This document shows, one piece after another, positions 4,535 through 62,403 of a stretch of DNA of 64,000 bases. Where the stretch lies: the IMG/VR virus record IMGVR_UViG_3300043418_000114, positions 124,001-188,000 of that record. The stretch is one strand, 5' to 3'. Position numbers and translations under genes: made by a program. Within the stretch, counting starts at the first letter, position 1. The number at the start of each line of letters is the position of its first letter. The notes beneath the pieces were generated by a model, which saw only the letters and a list, made by a program, of their open reading frames with translations, had not been told where the DNA came from and did not search any database.

Positions 4535-5113
4535 ATGCGTTCCTATCAAATCATAAACGAGTCCCCTGCTACCGAATTGGCCAAGAAATTGCCATCTCTC
4601 CAAAAGCACGACTATGACACCATCGATACCCTGATGCGTAAAATCTCACAGCGTCATCGTATAACTGGTAAGCACTTACATGACTTGTTTGTTAAGCAAT
4701 ATGGAAAAACTCCAGATAACTGGATCAAAGACGATCTATCTGAAGGTGATTCTTCGGAATTAGACATTGATGCGGAAGTTCAGAAGTTTATCAAATGGGC
4801 CGCAAGACGCCTACATCTACAAACTACACCACATATTGAACTGAGCCAAGATACCAAAGACGCACAGGACAATCATCACACAGGACTACATCGTACTGAC
4901 ACTGGTGAAATCTGGATTTACGTAAAGAATCGCAATTTAGTTGATATCTTGCGTACTGTGTTTCATGAGTTGGTACATCATCGTCAAGGTGAGTTAAAGA
5001 TGATTAAGCCAGGTGATAGCTATCCTGGTAGTCCAATCGAAGCAATGGCAGACATGTTGGCTGGTAAATACATCAAGATTTACGGCGAACAAAACCATCA
5101 CATCTTCCAGTAA
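4535..5113 (+). CDS. Late protein with HExxH zinc-metallopeptidase-like motif
   Basis: RTVFHELVHHRQ; ATAAATA at 4524-4530; N-terminus MRSYQIINE. Confidence 0.55.
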   Translation: MRSYQIINESPATELAKKLPSLQKHDYDTIDTLMRKISQRHRITGKHLHDLFVKQYGKTPDNWIKDDLSEGDSSELDIDAEVQKFIKWAARRLHLQTTPHIELSQDTKDAQDNHHTGLHRTDTGEIWIYVKNRNLVDILRTVFHELVHHRQGELKMIKPGDSYPGSPIEAMADMLAGKYIKIYGEQNHHIFQ

Positions 5114-5162
5114 ACACTGGATCGATTCGTTCTGAATCGTTCACCAAAACTGAGTAAAAAAG

Positions 5163-5191
5163 TTGCATTCTTTGCAGGGTTGTTATATACT
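5163..5191 (+). promoter_or_regulatory. sigma70-type promoter of DsbA-like/polymerase operon
   Basis: TTGCAT-N17-TATACT. Confidence 0.6.
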
Positions 5192-5212
5192 AACTACTTA
5201 CAAGGAGAACTT

Positions 5213-5479
5213 ATGTCAGATTATAACCGCTCATTCAATGGCGATGCCAAAATTAAATTAACTCAATTGGTCAACGAAGGTATGACAGTCTTGCACGAGA
5301 TTGACACCCTTCAAGGCGGATTGAACGATACGATCAAGGCAGTCGCAGAAGAATTGGAAATCAAACCAGGCACTCTCAAGAAAGCAATCAAGATTGCACA
5401 CAAGGCAAGCCTGGGTCAAACAAATAAAGACCACGACGAATTGAACACTATTTTGGAAACTGTAGGTAAGACACTTTGA
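5213..5479 (+). CDS. T4 DsbA/GapR-like dsDNA-binding protein
   Basis: 88 aa helical protein, KAVAEELEIKPGTLKKAIKIAHK; AGGAG RBS before ATG 5213; directly upstream of the polymerase. Confidence 0.55.
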   Translation: MSDYNRSFNGDAKIKLTQLVNEGMTVLHEIDTLQGGLNDTIKAVAEELEIKPGTLKKAIKIAHKASLGQTNKDHDELNTILETVGKTL

Positions 5480-8184
5480 GCTACGTTGATGCCATTCATA
5501 GCAGGGATGAGGATCGCATCTACGTGGTAGAGCGTCAGTCAGATGGCCGACGCACCTACAATGAATTCCCTGCTAACTACGTTCTATACTACGACGATCC
5601 TAAAGGAAAGCAACGTAGCATCTTTAACACACCTGTATCTCGATTCAGTACCCGCAAGCGTAAAGAGTTTGAAACTGAAAAGAGAATTCACTCTAACAAG
5701 CAATTGTACGAGAGTGATGTTAACGTTGTGTTCCGTTGCCTAGCCGATAATTATTTAGGTGTTGATGCTCCAAAACTTCACACTTGCTTTTTCGACATTG
5801 AAGTAGACTTTGATCCTATCAAAGGGTTTAGTCCTACTAGTGATCCATTCAACCCTGTGACAGCTATCAGTTGTTATCTAGACTGGATGGACACTTGTTT
5901 CACGTTGGTTATTGCTCCAAAGCATATGACCAAAGAAACAGCAACTGAAATCATTGGTGAATTTGAGAATACAATCTTGTTTGACAACGAGAAGGACATG
6001 TTCGATGTGTTCTTTCAGTTAATCGAAGACGCCGACGTTCTAACAGGCTGGAACTCAGAAGGCTATGATATTCCATACATGGTCAATCGTGTTACACGTG
6101 TTATGTCTAAAGATGATACACGTAAATTCTGTTTGCTTGGACAACTTCCTAAGCCAAGAGAGTATGAACGTTTCGGTAAAGTCGAATTGACGTATGACTT
6201 AGTTGGTCGCATTCACCTAGACTATTTGCAACTCTACAAAAAGTATAACTATGAATCTCGTCATAGCTATAAGCTCGATGCCATCGGTGAGATGGAAGTC
6301 GGCGAGAACAAAACCCAATACGAGGGCACTCTTGATCAGTTATATAACAAAGACTTTAAAAAGTTTATTGAATATAACAGACAAGATACGATGTTGTTGG
6401 TTAAGATCCACAACAAATTGAAGTTCCTTGATCTAGCCAATGCGCTGGCTCATGAGAACACTGTATTGTTACCTACTGTAATGGGCTCCGTTGCCATGAT
6501 TGAAATGGCAATTTTAAACGAAGCTCATGAAAGAGGTTTAGTTGTTCCAGATAAAAAACGAAAGGTAGAAAATGCAGAAGACATTCAATCAGCGGCAGGT
6601 GCCTATGTTGCTACTCCCAAAAGGGGCCTCCACGAATGGGTTGGTGCAGTCGATATCAACTCACTCTACCCGTCAACGATCCGCGCTCTTAACATGGCAC
6701 CAGAGACCATCGTTGCACAAGTCAGACAAACACTTACCGATCAATACATGAGAGAACGCGGTGCCAAACTGGCCCGTGAAAAGAAGTATTACAAAGATGG
6801 TGACGATGACGTTACAGGCGCAATCTTGTGGGAAGGATTGTTTGGTGCTCTAGAGTACACAGCAATCATGAACCAAGAACGTGGTACTATCTTAACTGTA
6901 GACTACGAAGATGGTCGCAGTGTAGAAATGAGTGCCGCCGAGATTTGGAAGATGGTCTTTGATAGCCATAAGCCATGGATGTTAAGTGCAAACGGTACAA
7001 TTTTTACGTATGAGAAAGAGGGTGTAATTCCTGGTCTACTTACACGTTGGTATACTGAACGTAAATCAATTCAGAAACAGGCAAAAGAAGCGTATGGTAC
7101 TGATATGTATGAATACTATGACAAACGCCAGCTTGTTCGTAAGATTTTGCTTAACTCTGCATACGGCGCACTGTTGAATGAACATTGTCGTTTCTATGAT
7201 AAGCGCATTGGTCAATCAGTTACTCTATCTGGTCGTCAGATTGTTAAGCACATGATGAGTACAATCAATGAAACAGTTGAGGGTAAGTATACTCATGAAG
7301 GTGAAGCTATCGTTTATGGCGATACTGACTCATGTTACTTTAGTGCATATGCAACCTTAAAACCACAGATTGATGCGGGTGACTTAGAATGGAACAAAGA
7401 TATTTGTATTGGTCTCTATGACGGCATTGCTGATCAAGCTAACAATACTTTCCCTTCGTTCTTAGAGAAAGCGTTCCATGCTCCTCGCAAGAATGGTGAG
7501 ATCATCAAAGCTGGTCGTGAATTGATTGGTGATCGTAGTATCTTTATCACTAAGAAGCGTTATGCTATCAACATCTTTGACAAAGAAGGCAAGCGTAAAG
7601 ACAAAGACGGAGCATTGGGTGATATCAAAGCCATGGGTCTAGACTTGAAACGTGCAGATACTCCAAAGTATGTGCAAGAATTCTTGATGGATGTACTTGA
7701 AATGGTACTACAACGAGGCAAGGGTAGTGAAGAAGTCATTGAACGAGTGCGAGAATTTAAACGAGTTATGGTATCTCAAGATAGTTGGACAAAGGGTTCA
7801 CCTAAATCCGTTAACAACTTGACCAAGCATACACAAGCGTTTGAAAAGACTGGTACTTGTAAAGTGGGTCACGCACGTGCCGCTATTAACTGGAATTATT
7901 TGCGACGAGTCCATGGAGATAACTACTCTATGCAAATTGTAGACGGCATGAAGATTGTTGTTTGCAAACTCAAGCCAAATGCATTGGGTTTTAACTCAAT
8001 TGCATATCCAGTTGACGAACTCAGACTTCCAGAATGGTTTAAAGAATTGCCATTCGATGATGACGAGATGGAAAAGACACTGGTCGACGAAAAGATTGAT
8101 AACTTGTTAGGTGTTCTGAATTGGGACATTAAGAGTAATATCGACGTTAAATCGACATTCGCCGAATTGTTCTCATTCGGTTAA
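5476..8184 (+). CDS. Family B DNA polymerase (T4 gp43-like) with 3'-5' exonuclease
   Basis: FFDIEV, WNSEGYDIPY, YNRQD (Exo I-III); DINSLYPS, KILLNSAYG, YGDTDS. Confidence 0.97.
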   Translation: MSYVDAIHSRDEDRIYVVERQSDGRRTYNEFPANYVLYYDDPKGKQRSIFNTPVSRFSTRKRKEFETEKRIHSNKQLYESDVNVVFRCLADNYLGVDAPKLHTCFFDIEVDFDPIKGFSPTSDPFNPVTAISCYLDWMDTCFTLVIAPKHMTKETATEIIGEFENTILFDNEKDMFDVFFQLIEDADVLTGWNSEGYDIPYMVNRVTRVMSKDDTRKFCLLGQLPKPREYERFGKVELTYDLVGRIHLDYLQLYKKYNYESRHSYKLDAIGEMEVGENKTQYEGTLDQLYNKDFKKFIEYNRQDTMLLVKIHNKLKFLDLANALAHENTVLLPTVMGSVAMIEMAILNEAHERGLVVPDKKRKVENAEDIQSAAGAYVATPKRGLHEWVGAVDINSLYPSTIRALNMAPETIVAQVRQTLTDQYMRERGAKLAREKKYYKDGDDDVTGAILWEGLFGALEYTAIMNQERGTILTVDYEDGRSVEMSAAEIWKMVFDSHKPWMLSANGTIFTYEKEGVIPGLLTRWYTERKSIQKQAKEAYGTDMYEYYDKRQLVRKILLNSAYGALLNEHCRFYDKRIGQSVTLSGRQIVKHMMSTINETVEGKYTHEGEAIVYGDTDSCYFSAYATLKPQIDAGDLEWNKDICIGLYDGIADQANNTFPSFLEKAFHAPRKNGEIIKAGRELIGDRSIFITKKRYAINIFDKEGKRKDKDGALGDIKAMGLDLKRADTPKYVQEFLMDVLEMVLQRGKGSEEVIERVREFKRVMVSQDSWTKGSPKSVNNLTKHTQAFEKTGTCKVGHARAAINWNYLRRVHGDNYSMQIVDGMKIVVCKLKPNALGFNSIAYPVDELRLPEWFKELPFDDDEMEKTLVDEKIDNLLGVLNWDIKSNIDVKSTFAELFSFG

Positions 8185-8191
8185 ACTAGTG

Positions 8192-8220: not shown

Positions 8221-8249
8221 ACATATATTAACTTCCACAAAGGATAAAA

Positions 8250-12457: not shown

Positions 12458-13636
12458 ATGACAAAAACAGTAGCAGTTATCGGCGCAGGCATAGCTGGTC
12501 TTACAACTGCGTATTACCTTGTTAGAAAAGGTTATCGAGTTACCGTGTATGAGCAAGAGCGATACGCGGCCATGCGTACTAGCTTTGCCAACGGTGGACA
12601 AATGTCTGTTAGCAATAGCGAAGTATGGACAACCTGGAGCAACGTCAAAAAAGGCGTTAAGTGGCTATTCACCAAAGATGCACCTTTGCTCATTCGTCCA
12701 TGCTTTGACTGGAAGCAATGGAAATGGATCGCTAAATTTCTGTACTACACTGCCAAAGGTGACTACAAAGAGAATACAGCATGGACTGTTCGAGCTGGTC
12801 TAGAAGCCAGAGAACTGTACAAAGAAATCATGTTTGAAGAAGGCATTTCGTTTGATTACTTGGGAACAGGTATCGTACACTTCTACAAAGACAAACAGTA
12901 CTGGGACAATGCTCAAACTGTTAAACAGATTTACAACGACAATGGTTGTGAGTGGGATTTACTAACACCGATGCAAGTGAAAGCTCTTGATCCTGCACTA
13001 GAAAATATCGACAACATGATTGGTGGCACATTCACTCCAAGCGATAGTACAGGCGACATTCACAAATTCTGTATGAATCTAGCGTTAGTTCTAGAGAACA
13101 AATACGGCGTTGAATTCAAGTATGAATCAAACATTACTCGCAACTGGGGCATTGAAGCATTAGCTGATGTGTTCGATGCAGTAGTCATTGCCGCTGGTGT
13201 TGGTAGCACTGAATTAGCAGGGCAAATTGGTGACACGCTAGACGTATATCCAGTCAAGGGCTACTCTATCACAATCAACAATGTTGATCCTAAGTATTTG
13301 CCTAAAGTAAGTCTGTTAGACGATCAAGCCAAGATCGTGACAAGTACATTGGGCAATCGATTCCGTGTTGCTGGTACTGCTGAGTTGACTGGAGAGAACT
13401 ACGATATCACTAGAGATAGAGTTGAGCCATTGTTAGAATGGGTTCATACGAACTTTCCTAATATCAATACAAGCGACTACACCCAGTGGGCATGCTTACG
13501 TCCTATGACACCTAACATGATGCCTATCACCAAACAGAGTGACAGGAACAAGAAAGTGTTCTACAATACAGGACATGGTCATCTTGGTTGGACTCTGAGT
13601 CCATACACCTCTAAGACTGTAGCAGATTTAATCTAA
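12458..13636 (+). CDS. dadA: D-amino acid dehydrogenase (FAD-dependent)
   Basis: VIGAGIAG, TSFANGGQMS, YPVKGYS, RVAGTAE, WACLRPMTP, NTGHGHLGWT. Confidence 0.9.
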   Translation: MTKTVAVIGAGIAGLTTAYYLVRKGYRVTVYEQERYAAMRTSFANGGQMSVSNSEVWTTWSNVKKGVKWLFTKDAPLLIRPCFDWKQWKWIAKFLYYTAKGDYKENTAWTVRAGLEARELYKEIMFEEGISFDYLGTGIVHFYKDKQYWDNAQTVKQIYNDNGCEWDLLTPMQVKALDPALENIDNMIGGTFTPSDSTGDIHKFCMNLALVLENKYGVEFKYESNITRNWGIEALADVFDAVVIAAGVGSTELAGQIGDTLDVYPVKGYSITINNVDPKYLPKVSLLDDQAKIVTSTLGNRFRVAGTAELTGENYDITRDRVEPLLEWVHTNFPNINTSDYTQWACLRPMTPNMMPITKQSDRNKKVFYNTGHGHLGWTLSPYTSKTVADLI

Positions 13637-14271: not shown

Positions 14272-14432
14272 TGGAACTACGTTATTTGCGTACACGAGAA
14301 GTAGACGGCACTGTGCATCAGGTGTTACAGTATAGAACACAGATTCAAGTGCCTGACTATAGCACAGAAAAGCATATTCCTAAGGTAGTATGGACTGACT
14401 GGAAAGATGTGCCAGTAGTCGAGAGTAATTAA
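14271..14432 (+). CDS. Small hypothetical protein missed by the ORF track (53 aa)
   Basis: TAATG coupling; MELRYLRTREVDGTVHQVLQYR...WTDWKDVPVVESN*. Confidence 0.6.
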   Translation: MELRYLRTREVDGTVHQVLQYRTQIQVPDYSTEKHIPKVVWTDWKDVPVVESN

Positions 14433-14983
14433 AGGCTTTTGCCCCAGCGAGTATTAATAACGTTCCAGTTAATAATCTTCCACTGTTCTTTCAAGTATTT
14501 TTTCTTGTCAGAGCCATAATCTAATAGCCATGCATGTTCCCACCAGTCTACTAATAGTAGAATGTCACTGCGAACTTCATGGTTTTTTATGGTCTTGATT
14601 TTGCCATCAGTGGATAGATAGATCCAGCCGCTACCTTCTATCTTCATAGCTTCTTCTTGGAATTGCTCCTTGAAGTCATCCCATGAGTTATAATGCTTGT
14701 TGATAAAGCCAAGCATGGGACCATTTGGCTTGTTAACGTTTCGTACTTCACGAAACTGAGGGAATAACATGTTATGCAAGAATGCACCTGCATAGTTGAA
14801 ATCCCTATCACCTTCTTTGTTGTTGTAACGTTCAGCATAACCATGCGCTAACTTGCCATAGTGTAAGTCCAATGTCTCTTTAGACAGCACAGGACTTACA
14901 TCTTTTGGCTCGAAGTTTAGTTGAATGATTTCTATATCTTGAGGCTTGCTTTTAGCCTCAAGTAGCTGAATCAAGTCACGCAT
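14429..14983 (-). CDS. sod: Fe/Mn superoxide dismutase
   Basis: LHYGK, AFLHNM, GSGWIYL, DWWEHAW metal ligands. Confidence 0.9.
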   Translation of the reverse strand: MRDLIQLLEAKSKPQDIEIIQLNFEPKDVSPVLSKETLDLHYGKLAHGYAERYNNKEGDRDFNYAGAFLHNMLFPQFREVRNVNKPNGPMLGFINKHYNSWDDFKEQFQEEAMKIEGSGWIYLSTDGKIKTIKNHEVRSDILLLVDWWEHAWLLDYGSDKKKYLKEQWKIINWNVINTRWGKSL

Positions 14984-14984: not shown

Positions 14985-16550
14985 TTAGTGTCTCAACAAT
15001 AGAGTACTTAGAACGTTTTGATCGTTCGCAGAGATATCGCCTTCACCTGGTGCAACAATGACGTTGTACTTCATGCCACCAACTTTAGGCTTGCGTGTAT
15101 ATTCATCATAAGATAGAATAGAGTTTGGTGCTAGACCATACTGTTTAGCTAGACGTTGTTTTAGTTCACCTAGCTTGTCTGGTTGAACTTGCCATTGACC
15201 TTCACCACCTTTGACTAGGTTGCCCTTTTGATCTTTAACCAACAAGTCTTGGAACAATTCATCAGGAACAATACGTGAGTTCTTTGTCTTTTCTAGACTT
15301 GGATCGCTAGCTTTGACTTGTTTCTCTTGTGATGTATGAGCGCCTTCACTCCAGTTGATAATGAAGTTAGCTGGCTTCTTAGCAAGTGCCGCATTAGCCA
15401 TCTTTGTGTAAGCATAGAACTTAACACCAGGATGCTTTTCAGCCATCTTTAGTGCCATGTCTAGATATTCTGGAGAGAAGAAATCACCAGCATCGTGCCA
15501 ACGAATTGTTACTTCATAACCACCCTTGTCGCCAAGTTTTTCTTCTTTGGTAATCTCTGCACTTAGTTGATTGAAGAAACCATCTGGATCATTCAATAGA
15601 TATGTCAAGATACGACCATCACTTTGCCAAGCATTCTTGAACTGAACTTTACCGCCCTTCATAGCGAAGCAATCTACTTTACATGAACCAGCACCTGGGC
15701 ATGTGTTCACAATGATTAGCTTGTCAGTTTGTTCGTCTACTGCAATACCAGTTAGTGCGGCGAAACCAACGTTAAAGAACTGTTCTAGTTCACCGTTGCT
15801 GTGCTTCATCTTCTCGTTCTGCTTTAGCAATGCCTTAGGGCGTTGCTTTAGTGTGGCTTTAACAGCATCTTCGCTGTATGTCTTGCCATCAGGACCCAAG
15901 TATTCAACAACACTAGAACGATGAATATAAGGCATCTTATACTTGTCCGTCTTTGTCTTACCAGAAACATACTTTTCAGCACCTGATTTTTTATCTAATT
16001 TAACTTGACCAGTTTTCTTATCAATGTCTGGAGTACCAACAATACGTTTCATGTAGTCTTGAAATTCATCACCGCCAAATTCACGACTTTGTGCTGGCAA
16101 TGCAGTAGCCTCATCTAAACCAGATAACTTACGAATTCTGGATAGATGTTCTTCGCTTTCCTTGAATGTTAAGCCTTCACCTGCTCTGGTTCTAACATAG
16201 CGAATAACTTGTTCTACCCATCCACTAACATCACTAGAACCGATTTCATCATCAGGACCCAAGTCAACCCAATCAGCAACTTCATCAATTGCATCCATGA
16301 TTGCCTGTGGGCCATATTTTGCCAACAATCCATGATGTTGATTTAAGATACGACGAGTGATTGCTTGAGATACCGGACTGTCTACACGACCTTCTGATAA
16401 TTCTTGCTCAACTTCTGCTTGTTCGCCTTCGGTTTCACCTGGCATATCGCCAGATTTAGCAACGAATTGCTGTGGTGTCATAATCTGGATGCCCGATGGT
16501 GCACCTGGCATTTTTGGCTCTGAGCCCTCTAGTAAATGTCTGATTTTCAT
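14985..16550 (-). CDS. GP88-like (radical-SAM-like Fe-S) protein with long acidic N-terminal extension
   Basis: NTCPGAGSCKVDCFA (Cx5Cx3C), IRWHDAGDFF, FYAYTK. Confidence 0.65.
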   Translation of the reverse strand: MKIRHLLEGSEPKMPGAPSGIQIMTPQQFVAKSGDMPGETEGEQAEVEQELSEGRVDSPVSQAITRRILNQHHGLLAKYGPQAIMDAIDEVADWVDLGPDDEIGSSDVSGWVEQVIRYVRTRAGEGLTFKESEEHLSRIRKLSGLDEATALPAQSREFGGDEFQDYMKRIVGTPDIDKKTGQVKLDKKSGAEKYVSGKTKTDKYKMPYIHRSSVVEYLGPDGKTYSEDAVKATLKQRPKALLKQNEKMKHSNGELEQFFNVGFAALTGIAVDEQTDKLIIVNTCPGAGSCKVDCFAMKGGKVQFKNAWQSDGRILTYLLNDPDGFFNQLSAEITKEEKLGDKGGYEVTIRWHDAGDFFSPEYLDMALKMAEKHPGVKFYAYTKMANAALAKKPANFIINWSEGAHTSQEKQVKASDPSLEKTKNSRIVPDELFQDLLVKDQKGNLVKGGEGQWQVQPDKLGELKQRLAKQYGLAPNSILSYDEYTRKPKVGGMKYNVIVAPGEGDISANDQNVLSTLLLRH

Positions 16551-16567: not shown

Positions 16568-16610
16568 TTGACTTTATTGCGTAACTGTGCTACACTTATC
16601 TATTATTTAT
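16568..16610. promoter_or_regulatory. Back-to-back sigma70 promoter (+, uvsE) and late promoter (-, GP88-like/SOD)
   Basis: TTGACT-N17-TACACT at 16568-16596; TATTTAT at 16604-16610. Confidence 0.65.
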
Positions 16611-16625
16611 CTCTTTGGACTCCAT

Positions 16626-31041: not shown

Positions 31042-31238
31042 TGAAAGTCTATCAACTGACCGCAAGACGAGCAGATGGTGGTATCACTGATTGGAACTAC
31101 AATCCAATCTATGCTACACTCGAAGGTGCTGAAAAGCAAAAAGAAATCGAATTCAATGCATACACCAAAGTCAACGGCGTGGTGATGTTTGAATGTCCCT
31201 ATATTTTTGAGATTAGAGAATTTGAGGTAAAAGAATGA
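31041..31238 (+). CDS. Hypothetical early protein
   Basis: Coupled ORF. Confidence 0.55.
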   Translation: MKVYQLTARRADGGITDWNYNPIYATLEGAEKQKEIEFNAYTKVNGVVMFECPYIFEIREFEVKE

Positions 31239-31459
31239 ACAACCGAATCAATGAACTCGCAGTCCAAGCTGGTGGAATCTGGCGTGGTGGCTATGTTGAA
31301 CAACCCAACGGTGATAGTGTCTACACAGACCAGAAGTTTGTTCACGGTGGAGACATGGATGTAGAACAATTCGCCCGACTGTTGGTGAAAGAATGTTGCG
31401 ATGTAGTTGATTACAACAATGCTCGGGCAATCGTTAATCATTTAGGAGTTGAAGAATGA
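31235..31459 (+). CDS. MNERIKEL-family cassette protein
   Basis: MNNRINELAVQA...EQFARLLVKEC...HLGVEE. Confidence 0.7.
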   Translation: MNNRINELAVQAGGIWRGGYVEQPNGDSVYTDQKFVHGGDMDVEQFARLLVKECCDVVDYNNARAIVNHLGVEE

Positions 31460-38725: not shown

Positions 38726-38931
38726 TGAACGAGCAAACAAGAATTAAGTATTCGTATGTTTCTATTTTACCAGAAGAAATGTCACCATATTCATCTGCGG
38801 TTAGAATAAGTCACAAGGATTCTACTGTTAAAGAATTGTTAGATCAGTTGTGTGTGAATAGTCAGATCAAAGATGAAAATGGTAAAATTGTGAGCAGTAT
38901 TTTCGATATCAATTACGAGGTTATTGAATGA
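38722..38931 (+). CDS. Hypothetical protein
   Basis: ATGA-coupled. Confidence 0.55.
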   Translation: MMNEQTRIKYSYVSILPEEMSPYSSAVRISHKDSTVKELLDQLCVNSQIKDENGKIVSSIFDINYEVIE

Positions 38932-39185
38932 ACGAACGAATTAAAGAACTTGCTGAACAGGCTGGCTGTGGCTATTTGTATGATTATTCAGCAGACGGAC
39001 ATGCAATGGTTTGTAATGTAAATGACATTGAAAAGTTTGCCGAGTTGCTTGTCAAGGAATGTGCTATGCTTGTCGAGGGATTTATACTTGATCAAGAGGT
39101 AGCTCTTGACGAATATGTTGAATATGAAGCAAGTAGTGTACTTCGAGAACACTTTGAAATAAACAGTGAAAGTAAATCTACATGA
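38928..39185 (+). CDS. MNERIKEL-family cassette protein
   Basis: MNERIKELAEQA...EKFAELLVKEC...REHFEI. Confidence 0.75.
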   Translation: MNERIKELAEQAGCGYLYDYSADGHAMVCNVNDIEKFAELLVKECAMLVEGFILDQEVALDEYVEYEASSVLREHFEINSESKST

Positions 39186-44517: not shown

Positions 44518-44955
44518 ATGACAAAAACTTTATCCCTTCGTTCCCTCGACATTCCGTCAATCCACAAATTTGGTATCGGCTTCGATAACATGTTTGATGA
44601 ATTAATGCGAATGAATGCTCAACAATCCCTTAACTATCCTCCATACAACATTCTCAAGAATACCGATGATTCATTCGATATTCAAGTGGCTGTTTCTGGC
44701 TTTAGTGAAGGTGAGATTGAGGTCAATCTTGACAATCGAGTATTGACTATCAAGGGTCAGAAGGCGGAAGATGTAGTTGCTGAATATCTGCATAAAGGTA
44801 TCAGTACACGTGATTTCGTGCGTGAGTTCACTCTAGCCGAACACGTTGAGGTAATCAATGCCTCACAAAAAGATGGTATTTTGACTATTCAACTAGAACG
44901 CATCGTTCCAGAAGAAAAGAAACCGAAAAATATCCAGATATCTTATTCTAAATAA
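44518..44955 (+). CDS. hsp20: Small heat shock protein (Hsp20/IbpA-like)
   Basis: IGFDNMF, NYPPYNI, AVSGF, YLHKGIS.R.F, DGILTI.LER.VPEEKKP. Confidence 0.95.
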
Positions 44956-45623
44956 GAATTGCATTTTTCAAAATGCCATCGTCGCATTCCTGGGGTAGCT
45001 CCAGATTTGCCACAATGCGGACAGGTAATCATGATTGAATTAGGATTAACATTCTTTTGAAAATTATGATTACCTTCTCGAACTAGCTCACGCGCCCGTA
45101 CTGATTCTTGGTTATATGTTCGACCACTTGATCTGATTCCAATACTAATATTTTTTCGATGTTGATCCGTCTTGAATCCTTTATAATTATCTTTGTTGGA
45201 TTTAGGGCCTTGTAATTTTCGGATAAACTCTGGATTTTTAACTTTCGCTTGATTTGCTAATTTAATTTTATTTGCATGATCTACTGATTTTGGACCTCTG
45301 AGTTTTTCTCTCGTTTCCAATGAATGCTTATGGCCAGTAGTTCCCTCTCCACCATCGGTTTGATTTCTTAGTATACCTGTCATGTTGTCCTTGCGACCAT
45401 ACCATCTTATCATGCGTCTTTCCAACGCAAAAGCTCCAATTTCAGATAGTGATTGTTCCATGATGATAATTCTACATTCATCTACTGGCAAATTTATGCA
45501 ATGATTTTTGTGCCATGCCCTACCATTAAATCCCTTTCCGATATAGTACGGCGTACCATCGTCGCGCAAATATGCGTAAACATAGAACCCAATCGGTGGA
45601 TTCTTTTTTGAATAAATAGTCAT
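44943..45623 (-). mobile_element. Free-standing GIY-YIG-like homing endonuclease gene with NUMOD-type repeats
   Basis: [45 protein letters not shown]-terminal CPHCG; antisense insertion with its own late promoter. Confidence 0.8.
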
Positions 45624-47243: not shown

Positions 47244-47834
47244 ATGAGTCTAGTCCCTATCGTCATCGAACAAACATCTAAGGGTGAACGTAGTTATGAC
47301 ATTTACAGCCGTCTACTGAAAGATCGTGTTATTTTGCTTGAAGGTGAAGTCCATGATCAAATGGCAAACCTTATCGTTGCTCAACTACTCTTTTTAGAAA
47401 GCGAAGACCCTGGCAAAGATATCAACATGTATATCAACTCTCCAGGTGGCAGTGTCACCGCTGGCATGGCAATCTATGACACCATGCAATTCATTAAGCC
47501 AGATATCCATACTATCGTGATGGGTCAAGCGTGTTCGATGGGTTCATTGCTAGCACAAGCTGGAAGCCCTGGCAAGCGTTTCATGTTGCCTAATGCTCGT
47601 CATATGATTCACCAACCATCCGGTGGTGCTCGTGGCATGCAATCGGATATCGAAATCTCCTACAAAGAAATCACTTACTTGAAAAAGCGTTTGACTGAAA
47701 TCTACGTCAAACACAACTCCGCTGGTAAGACATACGAAGAATTCGAACGTGACATGGATCGTGATAAGTTCATGAGCGCAGACGAAGCATTAGCTTATGG
47801 TCTAATCGATCAAGTGTTGGAGAAACGTCCTTGA
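47244..47834 (+). CDS. clpP: ATP-dependent Clp protease proteolytic subunit
   Basis: [27 protein letters not shown] (Ser), MIHQP (His), DRD (Asp). Confidence 0.97.
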
Positions 47835-50650: not shown

Positions 50651-50871
50651 AATATATTCCATTATTTGTTATTGTAACATTTTGTGGTATTGCCGGTCTT
50701 ATTGGATCGACTATCGTTATGACGTTCAGCAAGATCGAAACAAGATATAACTGTGAGTTAGCAGAAATTAGTCCTGACTTTCCAATCAAGGCAAAGCAGG
50801 AATGCAGAGAATTAAGGATAAAAAATGAAAAAGGAACTATTCAAGGAGATAGCACTACAAGCGGGCGGTAG
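50647..50871 (+). CDS. Small membrane protein
   Basis: TM plus C..EISPDFP....C. Confidence 0.55.
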   Translation: MKYIPLFVIVTFCGIAGLIGSTIVMTFSKIETRYNCELAEISPDFPIKAKQECRELRIKNEKGTIQGDSTTSGR

Positions 50872-51052
50872 TCATTATCCAGGTGTTGGTGGTGAAACGT
50901 TAGAGCGTTTCGCCGATTTGCTTTTGCAGGAAGTGATCAAGGCAGTAGAATCTACCCCAAGACATTGTGCATACACCACCTATGATTTGGGTGTAGTTGA
51001 ATGCACTATCGAGAAAACAATCAACACAATCAAAGAACGATTCGAGGTATAA
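50825..51052 (+). CDS. Distant MNERIKEL-family member
   Basis: KEIALQAGG...ERFADLLLQEV...IKERFEV. Confidence 0.6.
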   Translation: MKKELFKEIALQAGGSHYPGVGGETLERFADLLLQEVIKAVESTPRHCAYTTYDLGVVECTIEKTINTIKERFEV

Positions 51053-58211: not shown

Positions 58212-59246
58212 ATGATGAAGAAGACAATTTTGGCGCTGGCCATGATGGCTGGCCTCGGCGCGTATGCCCAAACCTCTCCTACCCTAATCAATCAGGGAAC
58301 CTACGATAGCAAGACTTTGGTAGATACTAATAGCACTTCCAATAGTGCTAGTTCAGTTACTACCAACAACACAAGTGTGAGTACCAGTACAAACACAAGT
58401 GCTAGTACGGTAAATAGCACTAGTGTAAACACGAACAACAACGTGAACAGTGGTACAATTACGTATAACAACAATAACGTATCCAGTGGCTCATTGACTA
58501 ACATAAATCAGAATACCAATAACGGTACGATGACTTATAACAACAATAATGCCATGAGTGGTTCAGTGACGTATAACAATAACAACGTGCAGTCTGGCAC
58601 ATTGACGAATAACAACAATAACGTCAATACCACTACAGCAACCACGGTTAATACAAACAACAACATTAACTCAGGAACACAAACGTTCAACAATAACAAC
58701 GTCAGTACCGCAGTTAATACCAATAACAACGTCAACACTGGCACCATGACGTACAACAATAACAATGCTAGTACCAGTTCTAACACCAACGTGAATCAGA
58801 ACAATAATAATAGTACTAGCACTGCTACAAACGTCAATCAGAATATTCAAAGCGGTTCGTTAACTAACAACAATAACAACGTTAGTAAGATTGACCAGAC
58901 ACTACATCAGCCACCTCCAACAGCTATCGCTCCAGCGATGATGAGCATGGGCACTGATTTGTGCGTTACCGGTGTTAGTGGCGCAACACAAACTCAAATC
59001 TTTGGCTTGAGCTTTGGCTCTACCATGCGTGATGCGAACTGTGAACGACTAAAGCTATCAAAGACTTTATTCGACATGGGCATGAAGGTGGCGGCAGTTG
59101 CCACAATGTGTCAAGATCGCCGTATCTGGGATGCTATGATGCAAGCTGGCACACCTTGCCCATATGAAGGCAAGATTGGTGAGCAAGCACGTGAAGCATG
59201 GGAAGCAAACCCTAAAAAGATTCCTACTATCGGCTTGAAAGAGTAA
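58212..59246 (+). CDS. Exported Asn/Thr-rich repeat protein with Cys-containing C-terminal domain
   Basis: Signal peptide; 12-aa repeats SGTITYNNNNVS; PPTAIAP...DLC...NCERLKLS...MCQD...GTPCP; ATAAATA at 58160. Confidence 0.8.
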   Translation: MMKKTILALAMMAGLGAYAQTSPTLINQGTYDSKTLVDTNSTSNSASSVTTNNTSVSTSTNTSASTVNSTSVNTNNNVNSGTITYNNNNVSSGSLTNINQNTNNGTMTYNNNNAMSGSVTYNNNNVQSGTLTNNNNNVNTTTATTVNTNNNINSGTQTFNNNNVSTAVNTNNNVNTGTMTYNNNNASTSSNTNVNQNNNNSTSTATNVNQNIQSGSLTNNNNNVSKIDQTLHQPPPTAIAPAMMSMGTDLCVTGVSGATQTQIFGLSFGSTMRDANCERLKLSKTLFDMGMKVAAVATMCQDRRIWDAMMQAGTPCPYEGKIGEQAREAWEANPKKIPTIGLKE

Positions 59247-59247
59247 G

Positions 59248-61134
59248 ATGAAGGGACTAGTACTCGGCTTGATGTTATTGAGCAATTCAGTTTTTGCTCA
59301 ATACATACAAAACGTGGGTATGATTGATGGTGCTACTGGTAACTTAGTATACACCTCTGTCAATCCACCACCTCCTGGCGCCGATCCAGTTACTTGGTCT
59401 GGCTTTACGGGCACAACTTCAACTGGTGGCGGATACAGCGGCGGCTATATGCCAGGATACAATTCAACCACTGGCACCTTCATGTTTGGTTATAGTAGAG
59501 GAACTATAGCGTATTCGACTCCAGTTAACTATGCATTAGCAATGGCCGGTACAAATATTCAGGTGAATGGGTTTAAGTATTCTTGGGAGTATATTAACCA
59601 AGACTACAGCAGAGGAACACTTAGTGGTAATATTAACTTGACTAGCAACACTGGTCAAGTATTGCAGAACTACAACTATAATATGCCACAGACAACTGCT
59701 GGCTGGACAACAATGAGTGGCATAGAAAACTTCAACACTCAGTATGCCGCATCATCATTGGGCCGTCTAAATGTCAGTTTCACTGGCAAAGATGATAGAT
59801 TCTGGGCTGGTTACTATGGTCCACAAATTAGAGATATCGATGTGAAGTTGTTATATAGCGTTGCACCTCCTCCTGTGCCAACGGACTTTCTAAAGTGGGT
59901 TCCTCTTACAAATGAAAACGGAGAGTTCACACTTACTAAGCCAGGTGTGGTTCGCTACGGTGCTAATGATGTGTATGTTTATCATGAATTTCAAGCTGGC
60001 ACGTATAGCTGTACTAACAGTGCTTGGGGCATTGATCCACTTAGTGGTGTTGGCAAATCTTGTTCACTAGGCACAAACACATCCACAACAACTACTCCCA
60101 CAGTTACTAAGACTACCACAACTGATACTTACACTAGTGGTGTGACATTGTTGGAACCAGTAACAACTGCATCGACACCTACTACCACAACGGTAGCAAC
60201 ACCGACAGTAGATTCTACATCCTTGCCAACTAGTTCCGCACCACAAACAAGTGTGATTAGTGCGGTTGTTTCTGCACCAGCACCGACTACTTCAACGAGT
60301 ACAACGACTGCAAGTACCTCAACCATATCGAGTACACAGAGTTCAAAAGAATCAAGTGGGTCAAGTGGTTCAACTAGTTTGGCACTAAGCATTATCAGTA
60401 AGAACAATGAACGTGATGCCGCTGGATCAGCAGTTGCACAATCAGCAATGGCACAAGCACAACAGGCGGCAACTCAAGCACAACAGGATGCCGCTAATGT
60501 AGCATCAAACGCAGTGTCAAACAGCGTGAGTGCTAACGCAGTGTCAATTGGTGGTCAGCAATCAACTGGTAATGGAATCAGAGCTACATCAAGTGGTAGT
60601 TCATCTGTATTGGCGTCGAACGCTTCCTTGTCTATTGGCACAACAGGAACTGCACAGCAACTAGTAATATCACAACAGCCTGGCACTACTTCTGTTATTA
60701 ACACAACAACACAAAGCGCAACTGCACAGACAGCATCCGCATATACACAGCAGAACGTTAGCACGACAATGCAAACGCAAGAGACTTACGTGTTGGTTCA
60801 ACCTAATACACTAACTGACAGAACAAACCCACTGACCGATATCGTTGAGGGTAAACAATCCGTTCCTCAAAGTAATTCAGTGGGAATGACAGGCCCTGCA
60901 GTGAATAAAAATGCACAGGACAATGACATTGCAGGTGGCGTATCTATCAACAAAATGGCTACTGCGCCTAATGGATACGGAGACTACTTAAACTTTACTA
61001 TGCGTGATGTTGCATTCTACGCACCAAAGGAAGTTTACAAGAATCAACGTAACGTTGATAACCAACGTGCATTGCGTACACTAACCAGTGACAGCAAGCA
61101 CAGAGAAATGGTGGAGATGCAATATGCTAAATGA
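59248..61134 (+). CDS. Exported multidomain protein with lectin-like Cys domain and Thr/Ser-rich stalk
   Basis: Signal peptide; VRYGA...CTNSAWGIDPLSGVGKSC; long T/S/A/Q low-complexity region. Confidence 0.75.
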   Translation: MKGLVLGLMLLSNSVFAQYIQNVGMIDGATGNLVYTSVNPPPPGADPVTWSGFTGTTSTGGGYSGGYMPGYNSTTGTFMFGYSRGTIAYSTPVNYALAMAGTNIQVNGFKYSWEYINQDYSRGTLSGNINLTSNTGQVLQNYNYNMPQTTAGWTTMSGIENFNTQYAASSLGRLNVSFTGKDDRFWAGYYGPQIRDIDVKLLYSVAPPPVPTDFLKWVPLTNENGEFTLTKPGVVRYGANDVYVYHEFQAGTYSCTNSAWGIDPLSGVGKSCSLGTNTSTTTTPTVTKTTTTDTYTSGVTLLEPVTTASTPTTTTVATPTVDSTSLPTSSAPQTSVISAVVSAPAPTTSTSTTTASTSTISSTQSSKESSGSSGSTSLALSIISKNNERDAAGSAVAQSAMAQAQQAATQAQQDAANVASNAVSNSVSANAVSIGGQQSTGNGIRATSSGSSSVLASNASLSIGTTGTAQQLVISQQPGTTSVINTTTQSATAQTASAYTQQNVSTTMQTQETYVLVQPNTLTDRTNPLTDIVEGKQSVPQSNSVGMTGPAVNKNAQDNDIAGGVSINKMATAPNGYGDYLNFTMRDVAFYAPKEVYKNQRNVDNQRALRTLTSDSKHREMVEMQYAK

Positions 61135-61266
61135 GATTATTAATTGGAATACAACTGCAATGATTATCGTCGCAGTGTTGAGTATACATGCCGGAATCAA
61201 ACTAATAAACCGAATGTTTGAAAACCTAGGCAAGAAAAAGAATTCATTATTTTAAAGGAAGTGAAT

Positions 61267-61833
61267 ATGTCAGAAGAAATTAAAGACTTAAACAGTCAAG
61301 TCGATAAACTAGAGGAAGCCGCTAAGAAGTATGCGAGTAAAGATACAGTCATTAGCATTGGTGGTTATGAGTTTACGCCAGCAAAGTTAATGGTTGCATT
61401 CACAATTGTGTCTTCAACTCTCGGCGGGCTTTATGGATGTTTTGAGGTCTACAAAGACTACACAAGCATGAAAAAACACATCGCGGAATACGTTGCACCT
61501 GATCTATCTGTATTTGATAAACGTTTAGCCGTTATCGAAGAAAATAGCCAGAAGTCAACTGACTACACCCGTGATATCAAAAACGATTTAAAGAACGATA
61601 TCCGTCGTTTGGAAGGAGTAGTTGAGAATGTAGAACGTAGTCAAAAACAAACTGCTAGAGAAACGGATGTTGCAGTGCGTGAAGTTCAAACCGAAGTGCG
61701 TAATACAACTCGCAGTGTCGAACAGGAACTACGTAAGAACACCCGTGAGATGGAACAGTCAGTAAAGAACATACAAAGAGAAGTTGACCAAAAAATCAAA
61801 CAGGCTATTGACAATCCACTAGCAAACAAGTAA
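61267..61833 (+). CDS. TM plus coiled-coil protein
   Basis: Single TM, then heptad repeats ending AIDNPLANK. Confidence 0.7.
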   Translation: MSEEIKDLNSQVDKLEEAAKKYASKDTVISIGGYEFTPAKLMVAFTIVSSTLGGLYGCFEVYKDYTSMKKHIAEYVAPDLSVFDKRLAVIEENSQKSTDYTRDIKNDLKNDIRRLEGVVENVERSQKQTARETDVAVREVQTEVRNTTRSVEQELRKNTREMEQSVKNIQREVDQKIKQAIDNPLANK

Positions 61834-61842
61834 AATGATTGA

Positions 61843-62403
61843 ATGAAAATCACAGAACTTGAAAAGAAAATGCCCCATCTGTATCTTGATATGGATGGGG
61901 TTCAAGCTGACTTCTTTGGTGCATGGGCTGACAAGCATAACGTTAGTCACTGGAGAGCTATCCAGGACAAAGAAGGTGAAATCGAAGAACTGGCAAACAG
62001 TACACCAGAACAAGTCTACGATTTCTTCCGCAAGCTAAAACCACTACCAGGTGGACAACTAATTATCAATTGGTTGAAAGAAAACAAAATCCCCTTTACC
62101 GTACTGAGTGCTCCTCTACGGGGCCCATACGCCGATGTTAGTAAGCAAGCCAAACGTGATTGGTTAGATGAACATAATCCAGGTACTAGCGAAGATGCTA
62201 TCTTTACTAGCGGCAAGCAAAAGTACGCAGTGACAGATGGTGTTGCTAATGTACTAGTTGACGATTTTGGACCCTATATCCAAAAATGGACAGATGCTGG
62301 CGGCATACCCGTCAAGCATGAGGATGAATCAGAAGTTGCAAGTGCCGCTGAGGACACTATTGAGAAACTAGAAAAGATTTATTCTCCTTATCTAAAACGA
62401 TAA
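61843..62403 (+). CDS. HAD-family 5'(3')-deoxyribonucleotidase-like protein
   Basis: YLDMDGV.ADF, VLSAP, LVDDF. Confidence 0.8.
   Translation: MKITELEKKMPHLYLDMDGVQADFFGAWADKHNVSHWRAIQDKEGEIEELANSTPEQVYDFFRKLKPLPGGQLIINWLKENKIPFTVLSAPLRGPYADVSKQAKRDWLDEHNPGTSEDAIFTSGKQKYAVTDGVANVLVDDFGPYIQKWTDAGGIPVKHEDESEVASAAEDTIEKLEKIYSPYLKR

What the first reader, a model, noticed from the sequence alone, without database searches (positions are those of the whole stretch)
4535..62403. Shared capsid-targeting / prohead-protease-like N-termini on four unrelated late enzymes: a possible injected enzyme payload
Seen: four genes downstream of late motifs begin MRSYQIINE|S (4535, HExxH protein), MRDLIQLLE|A (SOD), MKIRHLLE|G (GP88-like) and MKITELE (61843, HAD nucleotidase, the weakest match). 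The first and third also have internal LSE|G or LDE|A sites between domains. Known: T4 internal proteins carry the capsid-targeting sequence MKTYQEFIAE, and gp21 cleaves after (I/L)-x-E. Inference: these enzymes are packaged, matured and delivered with the DNA, acting before any phage transcription (ROS removal, nucleotide-signal degradation, proteolysis of defence proteins). Bacterial SODs and nucleotidases do not normally have such leaders.
Basis: partly seen in the sequence, partly recalled or inferred. Interest (0 to 1): 0.75.

Follow-up and report, generated by a model that had tools for sequence, protein, structure and literature searches.

The report
Capsid-targeting leaders on jumbo-phage enzymes
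An uncultured 364-kb T4-like jumbo phage puts a short T4-style "pack me into the head and cut here" leader on many unrelated late proteins, including three of the four flagged here (a zinc-protease-like protein, a GP88-family protein and a superoxide dismutase), so its injected protein cargo can probably be read from sequence; the fourth, a nucleotidase, does not fit.

Summary
The four N-termini are in the sequence as described: 4535(+), 14983(-), 16550(-) and 61843(+). The window lies in a complete 364,247-bp phage genome with a T4-type head module and a gp21-family prohead protease.

By nearest predicted promoter, 15 of 252 late-class genes carry a strict leader and 0 of 215 others do. The core consensus is MRAxEF(I/L)xE, close to the T4 capsid-targeting sequence MKTYQEFIAE. 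It sits on dozens of unrelated protein families in this clade.

- **HExxH protein:** canonical leader. A second conserved site (LSE|G, residue 70) lies in a disordered linker.
- **GP88-like protein:** a shorter "LLE|G" variant. It is invariant in 54 homologues and has a conserved internal LDE|A site.
- **SOD:** MRDLIQLLE|A is an extension of about 15-17 residues that cellular SODs lack. Similar extensions occur in most divergent short SOD clusters.
- **Nucleotidase:** not supported. A sigma-70-like promoter abuts its ATG, and its closest relatives do not keep the Glu.

Packaging, cleavage and injection are inferred by analogy with T4 and were not shown. Interest 0.65.

The parts
4523..4530 (+). 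Late-promoter-like motif GATAAATA, ending 4-5 nt before the HExxH gene's ATG (a leaderless-type layout). A second copy lies at 4389-4396.
   Evidence: GATAAATA occurs 43 times in the genome, 36 of them within 80 nt upstream of a gene in sense orientation. It heads the head-morphogenesis operon and fibre/tail operons. A gp55-like late sigma factor is present.
4535..4561 (+). Leader MRSYQIINE, with predicted cleavage after Glu9. It is the canonical capsid-targeting-type leader.
   Evidence: E9 is invariant and P3 hydrophobic in 43 unique homologues, which include MKTYQIVLES, MRAKQFIIES and MQAKEFITES. Codons vary synonymously. Residues 1-7 have pLDDT below 50.
4535..5113 (+). 192-aa protein made of the leader, a helical N-module (residues 10-67), a linker and a minimal zincin (HExxH) domain (residues 78-186).
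   Evidence: AF2 model with mean pLDDT 76. Foldseek best matches are Wss1, SPRTN, IrrE and minigluzincins at E 0.07-0.2. Invariant H144, E145, H148 and E169.
4736..4744 (+). Internal site L68-S69-E70|G between the N-module and the zincin domain.
   Evidence: Glu 98% and P3 hydrophobic 98% conserved in 43 homologues. It lies in the low-confidence segment 68-74.
16604..16611 (-). Late-promoter-like motif GATAAATA, 54 nt upstream of the GP88-like gene.
16527..16550 (-). Leader MKIRHLLE, with predicted cleavage after Glu8. This is the 8-residue 'LLE|G' variant.
   Evidence: E8 and P3 are 100% conserved in 54 unique homologues (MNFKELFEG, MKITELYEG, MKINDILES). HExxH orthologues L112-L115 carry the same type (MKSIELYES). 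The MCP of this phage starts MSKVLLE|G.
14985..16550 (-). 521-aa GP88-family protein: leader, variable acidic N-region, conserved LDE|A site, then a conserved C-terminal GP88 domain with an invariant Cys cluster.
   Evidence: Pfam PF17338, E 1.2e-25. Alignment A2. AF2 model is low-confidence, with residues 1-57 and 124-159 disordered. Function unknown.
16110..16118 (-). Internal site L145-D146-E147|A in front of the conserved C-terminal part.
   Evidence: Glu 100%, P3 96% and P1' Ala 98% conserved in 54 homologues.
14957..14983 (-). Leader MRDLIQLLE, with predicted cleavage after Glu9.
   Evidence: All 80 related SOD genes keep I-x-(L/I)-(L/I)-E. Two distant ones read MYDVVEKITE|S and MYDVVEKLEE|S. 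29 of 38 divergent SOD clusters with a 14-40-aa extension carry hydrophobic-x-E, against 10.8+-2.4 in shuffles.
14429..14983 (-). 184-aa Fe/Mn-type superoxide dismutase with a shortened N-hairpin and an N-terminal extension of about 15-17 residues. It is probably translationally coupled to the GP88 gene (stop, 1 nt, ATG).
   Evidence: Query residue 18 aligns to residue 4 of PDB 1ues. By my reading of the sequence against the 1ues alignment, residues match the positions of the four metal ligands (His in LDLH, His in FLHN, Asp and His in DWWEH). No tool scored this.
61808..61836 (+). Sigma-70-like promoter TTGACA-17 nt-TAAAAT, ending 6 nt before the nucleotidase ATG.
   Evidence: 11 of 12 consensus matches. 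In relatives the same gene is preceded by TGTGATATAAT.
61843..62403 (+). 186-aa NT5C/HAD 5'-deoxyribonucleotidase. The N-terminal extension MKITELEKK precedes the DMDGV motif. It is probably not a member of the leader class.
   Evidence: The start at M1 is supported because many homologues have Ile in place of M10. The closest relatives lack a conserved Glu.

Best explanation
The window belongs to a T4-superfamily jumbo phage whose late genes include a large set of cargo proteins. Each cargo starts with a short propeptide built like the T4 capsid-targeting sequence: Met, usually Lys/Arg, a few variable residues, one or two hydrophobic residues, any residue, then Glu.

Proposed mechanism, by analogy with T4 IPI-III, Alt and gp24:
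1. The leader gives the protein affinity for the scaffolding core, so it is built into the prohead.
2. The gp21-family protease cuts after the Glu, and after conserved internal (L)-x-E sites in disordered linkers. This frees the mature domains inside the head.
3. The cargo leaves with the DNA at infection.

The HExxH zincin-like protein (canonical leader), the GP88-family protein and the superoxide dismutase (both the 'LLE' variant, also seen at the N-termini of this phage's own major capsid and scaffold proteins) belong to this set. The nucleotidase most likely does not. It looks like an early, cytoplasmic nucleotide-metabolism enzyme whose N-terminal extension only resembles a leader.

What is shown here:
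- the motif's excess over chance and its restriction to late-class genes;
- its conservation at the amino-acid level across homologues;
- its presence on many unrelated families;
- the presence of the protease and head module.

What is inferred: binding to the core, cleavage, packaging, ejection and any early function in the host.
For: **T4-like phage with the right machinery**
- The DNA polymerase is 43-48% identical to those of Phosso, Atu_ph07, XaC1 and RaK2.
- Peptidase_S77 (gp21) scores E 5.6e-28 and Gp23 scores E 2.8e-99. They sit in an operon portal, small core proteins, protease, scaffold, MCP.
- The MCP aligns so that QLLAE|S matches the FLTE|A stretch of T4 gp23.
- A gp55-like late sigma factor is present.

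**Excess and specificity of the leader**
- 15 observed against 2-4 expected; 9 against 0 at the DNA level.
- Strict leader: 15 of 252 late-class genes against 0 of 215 others, Fisher P 8.5e-5.

**Likeness to T4**
- MRSYQ-IINE and MRAKEFISE resemble MKTYQEFIAE of T4 ipII and ipIII, read from NC_000866.
- T4 gp24 (MAKINELLRE), Alt (MELITE), gp22, gp21, gp67 and gp68 all carry N-terminal (L/I)xE.
- The roles of the T4 residues are described in PMC9026906.

**Modularity**
- Other leader proteins in this genome include GNAT+ART-PolyVal and GH19.
- In 1.15 Mb of related contigs the leader sits on more than 25 body families, including NUDIX, GGACT, amidoligase, Hydrolase_2+GNAT, GH19 and ART.
- In a separate IMG/VR scan, 148 of 149 complete pattern matches start ORFs of 60 aa or more, in 28 families.

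**Family-level conservation**: with synonymous codon variation.

**Accessibility**: the leaders and internal sites lie in low-pLDDT segments.

**SOD extension**: absent from cellular SODs. Two divergent leader-bearing SOD genes are also preceded by AATAAATA.

**Precedent**: chlorovirus PBCV-1 packages a late-expressed SOD in its virion (PMC7019647).
Against: - There are no protein-level data. The phage is uncultured and has no close cultured relative.
- The SOD and GP88 leaders are not recognised by a matrix built from canonical leaders, so their membership rests on conservation and context.
- Promoter classes are motif-based inferences.
- The complex prediction of protease with SOD residues 1-30 gave no answer.
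- The small MRAxEF proteins are not basic like the T4 internal proteins (pI about 6).
- The phage also encodes ClpX and ClpP, so an N-terminal degron role cannot be excluded.
- The GP88 domain has no known function.
Confidence: 0.65

Rival explanations
1. The proteins are packaged and cleaved as proposed, but they are not injected effectors. They would act inside the prohead or virion, or during assembly. For example, the SOD could protect the packaged genome or the assembling particle from oxidative damage, and the zincin could help process cargo.
For: - The sequence evidence (leader, protease, late class) speaks only to head targeting, not to ejection.
- Zincin domains in phage head proteins have been proposed to process cargo (PMC5512222).
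- In T4, some core proteins are simply degraded (PMC9026906).
Against: - Leader cargos in this clade include ART, GH19, NUDIX and GGACT domains, which make sense only in or on the host cell.
- T4 Alt and the internal proteins, the closest model, are ejected.
Confidence: 0.15
2. For the SOD, GP88 and nucleotidase proteins the resemblance is coincidental. A short amphipathic N-terminal helix with a Glu is common, and the MK/MR starts reflect A-rich codons favoured at the 5' ends of leaderless or highly expressed mRNAs. Only the MRAxEF class would be a true targeting signal.
For: - The canonical matrix does not score these three.
- The loose (I/L)xE pattern is equally frequent in early genes.
- Many late genes here are leaderless.
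- The nucleotidase has an early-type promoter and a non-conserved leader.
Against: - Invariant P3 and P1 with synonymous codon changes in 54 GP88 homologues and 80 SOD homologues.
- An excess of hydrophobic-x-E in the extensions of divergent SOD clusters (29 of 38 against 10.8).
- HExxH orthologues switch between the canonical and the 8-residue type.
- The same 'LLE' ending occurs on this phage's MCP and scaffold.
- SOD and GP88 genes cluster with canonical-leader genes.
Confidence: 0.12
3. The leader is an N-terminal recognition tag for another system, for instance the phage-encoded ClpXP, which would time the destruction of late enzymes. Alternatively it could be a localisation signal unrelated to the head.
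For: ClpX (42991-44193) and ClpP (47244-47834) are encoded in the window. From my own knowledge, ClpX can recognise N-terminal motifs.
Against: - The leader resembles the T4 capsid-targeting sequence specifically and ends in the gp21-type P3/P1 pair.
- Conserved internal L-x-E sites in linkers fit an endoprotease, not a processive unfoldase.
- The head proteins themselves share the ending.
Confidence: 0.05

Closest known systems
[quoted passage not shown]
   Same: - A propeptide of about 10 residues at the extreme N-terminus.
- A near-identical pattern (MKTYQEFIAE against MRAxEF(I/L)xE and MRSYQIINE).
- It ends in the (L/I)-x-E site of a gp21-family protease.
- It is attached to unrelated, fast-evolving cargo genes of a T4-type phage.
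   Different: - It is one residue shorter.
- About 13-15 cargo genes per genome, against 3-4 in T4.
- Cargos are mostly mid-sized, folded, enzyme-like proteins of neutral pI rather than small basic proteins.
- Some cargos carry a reusable helical module and a second cleavage site after the leader.
- Function is untested here.
T4 Alt (packaged ADP-ribosyltransferase) and T4 gp24 N-terminal propeptides
   Same: - An enzyme packaged through a short N-terminal propeptide cut at I-T-E (Alt, MELITE|L), and the L-R-E site of gp24 (MAKINELLRE|S).
- This genome has a leader-tagged GNAT+ART protein.
- The 'LLE'-type leaders of SOD and GP88 resemble these non-IP leaders more than they resemble the IP sequence.
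   Different: The ART here belongs to the ART-PolyVal family, not the Alt family. The SOD, zincin and GP88 cargos have no T4 counterpart.
Long propeptides of ejection proteins in phiKZ-like and SPN3US giant phages (PMC5694885)
   Same: - Giant phages with a gp21-like protease cutting after Glu.
- Many head-internal ejection proteins.
- Paralogues share conserved N-termini.
   Different: Those propeptides are more than 100 residues long with an (S/A)-x-E motif, in an unrelated phage lineage. Here the leaders are T4-length with a hydrophobic P3.
Polyvalent proteins of phages and conjugative elements (Iyer et al. 2017, PMC5512222)
   Same: The same domain repertoire (zincin MPTase, ART-PolyVal, lysozyme or cell-wall hydrolase, GNAT, and others), predicted to enter the host with the DNA.
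   Different: There the domains are fused into one giant polypeptide. Here each is a separate gene with its own leader, or two modules separated by a protease site.
Virion-packaged Cu/Zn SOD of chlorovirus PBCV-1 (PMC7019647)
   Same: A late-expressed viral SOD carried in the particle and proposed to lower superoxide early in infection.
   Different: It is a eukaryotic giant virus with a Cu/Zn enzyme and no propeptide or protease targeting. Here the enzyme is an Fe/Mn-type SOD in a tailed phage, and packaging is only predicted.

Membership tests
T4-type capsid-targeted, gp21-processed head-internal proteins | The phage encodes a gp21-family (Peptidase_S77) prohead protease within a T4-type head module. 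| tested here: met
   PF03420 E 5.6e-28 and PF07068 E 2.8e-99. The operon order is portal, core proteins, protease, scaffold, MCP.
T4-type capsid-targeted, gp21-processed head-internal proteins | A short N-terminal propeptide (about 7-20 aa) ending in (L/I)-x-E. | tested here: met
   HExxH I-N-E9, GP88 L-L-E8 and SOD L-L-E9 are all conserved in homologues. The nucleotidase has only I-T-E5, which its closest relatives do not conserve.
T4-type capsid-targeted, gp21-processed head-internal proteins | Similarity to the IP-type sequence, including aromatic or hydrophobic residues at the positions that matter for targeting in T4 (4 and 7). | tested here: inconclusive
   The HExxH leader scores as canonical (rank 8 of 467) and has Tyr4 and Ile6-Ile7. 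The SOD, GP88 and nucleotidase leaders are not recognised by the canonical matrix.
T4-type capsid-targeted, gp21-processed head-internal proteins | The same leader on unrelated cargo proteins (a transferable tag). | tested here: met
   At least 13 proteins in this genome, and more than 25 plus 28 body families in related contigs.
T4-type capsid-targeted, gp21-processed head-internal proteins | Late expression together with the head proteins. | tested here: inconclusive
   Only promoter motifs are available. GATAAATA precedes the HExxH and GP88-SOD genes. The nucleotidase has a sigma-70-like promoter. No transcript data were examined.
T4-type capsid-targeted, gp21-processed head-internal proteins | Physical presence in proheads or virions, cleavage at the predicted Glu, and ejection into the host. 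| not testable with these tools
   The phage is uncultured. The complex prediction gave no answer.
Fe/Mn superoxide dismutase | Sod_Fe_N and Sod_Fe_C domains with the His, His, Asp, His metal ligands. | tested here: met
   Sod_Fe_C scores 2e-22. Sod_Fe_N scores below its cut-off because the hairpin is shortened. By my reading of the sequence against that alignment, residues match the four ligand positions; no tool scored this.
Zincin-like metallopeptidase (minimal gluzincin or MPTase type) | An HExxH helix, a downstream Glu-bearing helix and a three-stranded sheet. | tested here: met
   Predicted model only, with invariant H144, E145, H148 and E169. Foldseek best matches are Wss1, SPRTN, IrrE and minigluzincins at weak E-values of 0.07-0.2. 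There is no Pfam hit, so subfamily membership is open.
NT5C / HAD 5'(3')-deoxyribonucleotidase | HAD motif I (DxDxV/T) and the NT5C profile. | tested here: met
   PF06941 scores 5.7e-8, above its cut-off, and phrog_2643 scores 7e-22. DMDGV lies at residues 16-20.
Polyvalent proteins (Iyer et al. 2017) | Two to fifteen effector domains fused in one polypeptide. | tested here: not met
   The cargos here are separate genes with one or two modules each. They share the domain repertoire but not the architecture.

The most novel reading that the evidence does not exclude
In this widespread, uncultured jumbo-phage clade, the late promoter lies 4-7 nt before the ATG and is followed directly by the 9-residue leader. 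Together they would form a portable cassette that turns any captured gene into head cargo. That would give a sequence-readable 'ejectome' of dozens of enzyme families, among them an Fe/Mn superoxide dismutase delivered with the DNA to blunt an oxidative burst at entry. To my knowledge no packaged SOD has been described in a tailed phage (one targeted literature search found none). It would also be a far larger enzyme payload than T4's.
Probability: 0.35. Interest if true: 0.8.

Novelty: new variant of a known kind. Interest (0 to 1): 0.65.

Why it matters
If the leader works as in T4, the proteins a phage injects ahead of its own gene expression could be listed from sequence alone, for a large group of uncultured jumbo phages. 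Those proteins are the first line of counter-defence and host takeover. The approach would flag unexpected cargos (SOD, zincin, GP88, NUDIX, GGACT, ART, cell-wall hydrolases) as candidate anti-defence or entry factors. It would extend the T4 capsid-targeting principle across the T4 superfamily. It would also supply new natural leaders and cleavage sites for protein-packaging vectors.

Tried and rejected
- **Megablast of 13 kb against cultured phages:** no match.
- **Canonical-leader scoring matrix:** it separated the HExxH leader from the other three, so one uniform 'shared sequence' was rejected.
- **Loose (I/L)xE criterion:** not discriminating between late-class and other genes.
- **Complex prediction of protease plus SOD residues 1-30:** no answer; not used as evidence either way.
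- **GP88 function:**
  - PDB sequence search found nothing.
  - Atlas and AlphaFold-DB searches found only other GP88 proteins.
  - Foldseek against PDB gave only weak TIM-barrel-like noise on a low-confidence model.
  - So 'enzyme' is unproven.
- **HExxH protein:** no Pfam hit and no PDB hit by sequence.
- **GC-rich spacer upstream of the HExxH gene (4418-4520):**
  - no tRNA;
  - no Rfam family anywhere in the window;
  - folding no better than shuffles, z 0.29.
- **Internal start M10 or M17 for the nucleotidase:**
  - M17 would remove the catalytic Asp.
  - M10 is Ile in many homologues.
- **Cultured relatives:**
  - The canonical pattern occurs only 0-2 times each in Phosso, Atu_ph07, XaC1 and RaK2. 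One of the two Atu_ph07 hits contains an in-frame stop.
  - The Phosso and Atu_ph07 hit regions carry only hypothetical proteins. They give no proteomic link.
- **Contexts of two divergent SODs:** short contigs, phage-like but not diagnostic.

Full report
**What the window is.** The 64-kb window is positions 124,001-188,000 of a single 364,247-bp virus record with direct terminal repeats, rated complete, 41% G+C. No cultured phage is close at the DNA level. The DNA polymerase (5476-8184) is 43-48% identical to those of T4-superfamily jumbo phages: Sinorhizobium Phosso, Agrobacterium Atu_ph07, Xanthomonas XaC1, Klebsiella RaK2, CBB and GAP32.

The genome encodes a gp21-family prohead protease (PF03420, E 5.6e-28) and a gp23-type major capsid protein (PF07068, E 2.8e-99). 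They sit in an operon of portal, two small core-like proteins, protease, scaffold and MCP. A gp55-like late sigma factor is also present. Hundreds of related contigs exist in IMG/VR.

**The observation.** All four N-termini are present as written. The domain calls hold:
- Sod_Fe_C (2e-22), GP88 (1.2e-25) and NT5C (5.7e-8; phrog 5'-3' deoxyribonucleotidase 7e-22).
- The fourth protein has HELVH at residues 144-148 and no Pfam hit.

It starts 15 of 467 called genes, against 2.2+-1.5 in shuffles, or 4.3+-2.1 with MK/MR held fixed.
- MRAKEFISE, MRAHEFLTE, MRAKEFIYE, MRAFEFLGE, MRAEEFLFE, MRATEFITE and MRIFEFVNE;
- plus MKINQIIVE, MRSLKQYIME and MRFSEILSE.

A degenerate DNA version of this 9-mer hits nine gene starts and nothing in the reversed control. 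T4 ipII and ipIII, read from the T4 record, start MKTYQEFIAE. The new consensus is the same sequence with one residue fewer.

**Late or early.** The octamer GATAAATA occurs 43 times, 36 of them within 80 nt upstream of a gene in sense orientation. T4's late promoter is TATAAATA. Here the motif heads the head operon and the fibre, sheath and baseplate-like operons.
- It ends 4-5 nt before the HExxH ATG and lies 54 nt before the GP88 ATG.
- The SOD ATG follows the GP88 stop by one base.

When genes are assigned to the nearest upstream promoter-like motif:
- a strict leader pattern is found in 15 of 252 late-class genes and 0 of 215 others (Fisher P 8.5e-5);
- a loose (I/L)xE rule gives 38 of 252 against 23 of 215, which is not significant.

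The nucleotidase gene is different. TTGACA-17 nt-TAAAAT (11 of 12 consensus matches) ends 6 nt before its ATG. In relatives the same gene follows TGTGATATAAT. That is an early, host-sigma-type layout.

**Conservation in relatives.**
- *HExxH family (43 unique sequences).*
  - Residues 2-8 drift freely: MRAKQFIIES, MKTYQIVLES, MQAKEFITES, MISNNFIAES, MLSVDIINES.
  - Glu9 is invariant, P3 is always hydrophobic and P1' is Ser in 39 of 43.
- *GP88 family (54 unique sequences).*
  - Glu8 and Leu/Ile6 are invariant and P1' is Gly or Ser: MNFKELFEG, MKITELYEG, MKINDILES.
- *Codon use.* Codons at P3, P1 and P1' vary synonymously, so selection acts on the peptide.
- *Link between leader types.* Four HExxH orthologues carry the 8-residue GP88-type leader (MKSIELYES). 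This ties the two types together.
- *SOD.*
  - All 80 related genes keep I-x-(L/I)-(L/I)-E. Two at 61-64% identity read MYDVVEKITE|S and MYDVVEKLEE|S. Many are directly preceded by GATAAATA 4-6 nt from the ATG.
  - A search of 1.84 billion cluster representatives gave 75 full-length homologues. Of these, 38 have a 14-40-residue extension before the SOD core, and 29 of the 38 contain hydrophobic-hydrophobic-(x)-Glu. Shuffles give 10.8+-2.4 and internal windows give 1-17. Examples are MKIEHLLE|R, MQDIKQWIQLFE|A and MNTFKNILKLLE|D.
  - The 31 cellular-type sequences start within 13 residues of the core.
  - Two of the divergent genes are preceded by AATAAATA.
  - Against PDB 1ues the phage SOD aligns from its residue 18 to residue 4 of the enzyme. 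By my reading of the sequence against that alignment, residues match the four metal-ligand positions. No tool scored this.
- *Nucleotidase.*
  - Homologues have an 8-17-residue variable extension before (M/I)PHLYLDMDG. Some look leader-like (MKIKELMED, MMRIRELLEE).
  - The closest relatives read MKIDELENK, MKTDDLKK or MKIEESKK, with no conserved Glu.

**Internal sites and structure.**
- LDE|A at residue 147 of the GP88 protein (Glu 100%, P3 96%, Ala 98%);
- LSE|G at residue 70 of the HExxH protein (98% and 98%);
- LSE|G at residue 53 of the GP88 protein, only 46% conserved.

In the AF2 model of the HExxH protein (mean pLDDT 76), residues 1-7 and 68-74 are the only segments below 50. They flank a helical module (11-66) and a minimal zincin core (helix, three strands, HExxH helix, Glu helix). 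The best structural matches are Wss1, SPRTN, IrrE and minigluzincins, at weak E-values.

The GP88 model is poor (mean pLDDT 59), but again residues 1-57 and 124-159 are disordered. Its conserved C-terminal domain matches only other GP88 proteins, so its activity is unknown.

The head proteins of the same phage carry the same endings, conserved across 80 related loci:
- MCP: MSKVLLE|G, ALLE|G and QLLAE|S. The last aligns with the FLTE|A stretch of T4 gp23.
- Scaffold: MLDAIKPLLE|S.
- Protease: MALYLKE|H.

**The cargo set.** Other leader proteins in this genome include a GNAT plus ART-PolyVal protein, which is the functional analogue of T4 Alt, a GH19 muramidase-like protein, and two small tandem proteins.
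- In 1.15 Mb of related contigs, 283 of 1,392 long ORFs start with the leader. Outside the three seeded families (HExxH, GP88, SOD), which account for about 190 of the 283, the bodies form more than 25 families. Their Pfam hits include GH19, ART-PolyVal, NUDIX, GGACT, Amidoligase_2 and Hydrolase_2+GNAT.
In these loci, 148 of 149 complete matches open ORFs of 60 aa or more, in 28 families.
- Where a leader gene has its own late motif, the motif ends 4-7 nt before the ATG in 53 of 62 cases. This suggests a compact promoter-plus-leader unit.
- Cultured distant relatives have only 0-2 canonical leaders each, so the expansion is a feature of this clade.

**Interpretation.** T4 biology supplies the mechanism.
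- The first ten residues of the internal proteins target them to the scaffolding core.
- gp21 then removes the leader after (L/I)-x-E.
- Foreign proteins given the leader are packaged and delivered (PMC9026906, PMC3012670, PMC5694885).

The evidence here fits the same mechanism for the HExxH, GP88 and SOD proteins. It does not show it. The domain repertoire matches that of proteins predicted to enter with phage DNA (PMC5512222). A virion-packaged late SOD is known in chlorovirus PBCV-1 (PMC7019647).

The nucleotidase is best read as an early metabolic enzyme. The complex prediction was uninformative. Alternative readings (cargo that acts only inside the head, coincidence for the non-canonical leaders, a ClpXP tag) are given above with their weights.

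**Verdict.** It is a new variant of the T4 capsid-targeting system rather than a new kind of system.

Noticed in passing
window 42991-44193 (+) and 47244-47834 (+): The phage encodes a ClpX-like ATPase (ClpX zinc finger plus AAA_2) and a ClpP protease (PF00574, E 7e-82), so it carries its own ClpXP.
   Followed up: partly
window 61808-61843 (+); related loci L183-L193: A near-consensus sigma-70 promoter (or TGTGATATAAT in relatives) ends 6-7 nt before the nucleotidase ATG. This implies a leaderless early mRNA.
   Followed up: partly
genome-wide, e.g. window 4523-4537; loci L012-L279: The late motif GATAAATA often ends only 4-7 nt before the ATG, which implies leaderless late mRNAs. For leader-bearing genes in relatives this holds in 53 of 62 cases, suggesting a compact promoter-plus-leader cassette.
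   Followed up: partly
window 4562-4735 (residues 10-67 of the HExxH protein); L035, L068, L072, L074, L077, L085, L091, L132: A conserved helical module (ESAAxELAKKLPSLxKHDYDTID...) follows the leader. In relatives it is reused in front of other, larger C-terminal regions of 253-655 aa. In L132 it lies behind a second, canonical leader.
   Followed up: partly
genome 17416-18173 (outside the window); loci L372-L491: Tandem pairs of small (113-141 aa) proteins of the form MRAxEFxTEG...HHHH...GGYDRxYH are the commonest cargo of the canonical leader in IMG/VR (69 of 148). They may be internal-protein analogues, but their pI is about 6, not basic.
   Followed up: no
genome 116001-123442 (just upstream of the window): A late operon carries four leader-tagged genes (MKINQIIVE, MRAFEFLGE, MRAEEFLFE, MRATEFITE with GH19) and a 1,140-aa protein. 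It looks like a cargo island.
   Followed up: partly
window 12458-13636 (+): An FAD-dependent oxidoreductase of the DAO family (E 3.5e-60) lies about 800 nt from the SOD gene. Any link to oxidative chemistry was not examined.
   Followed up: no
window 31235-31459, 31656-31892, 38928-39185, 50825-51052 (+): A family of small early-class paralogues shares N-termini such as MNERIKELAEQAG. They match the loose (I/L)xE rule by chance and illustrate its lack of specificity.
   Followed up: no
window 58212-61134 (+): Two large proteins (344 and 628 aa) with signal-peptide-like N-termini (MMKKTILALAMMAGLGAYAQ, MKGLVLGLMLLSNSVFAQ) lie behind a late motif at 58159. Neither has a Pfam hit.
   Followed up: no
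window 44943-45623 (-); genome 10214-10756 and 103393-104055: Three paralogous ORFs whose N-termini (for example [19 protein letters not shown]) look GIY-YIG-like to me are each preceded by a (G/T)ATAAATA motif about 60 nt upstream. No domain search was run on them.
   Followed up: no
genome about 298357-298629 (-): A weak homologue of the T4 gp55 late sigma factor (30% identity over 97 aa, E 2e-5).
   Followed up: partly
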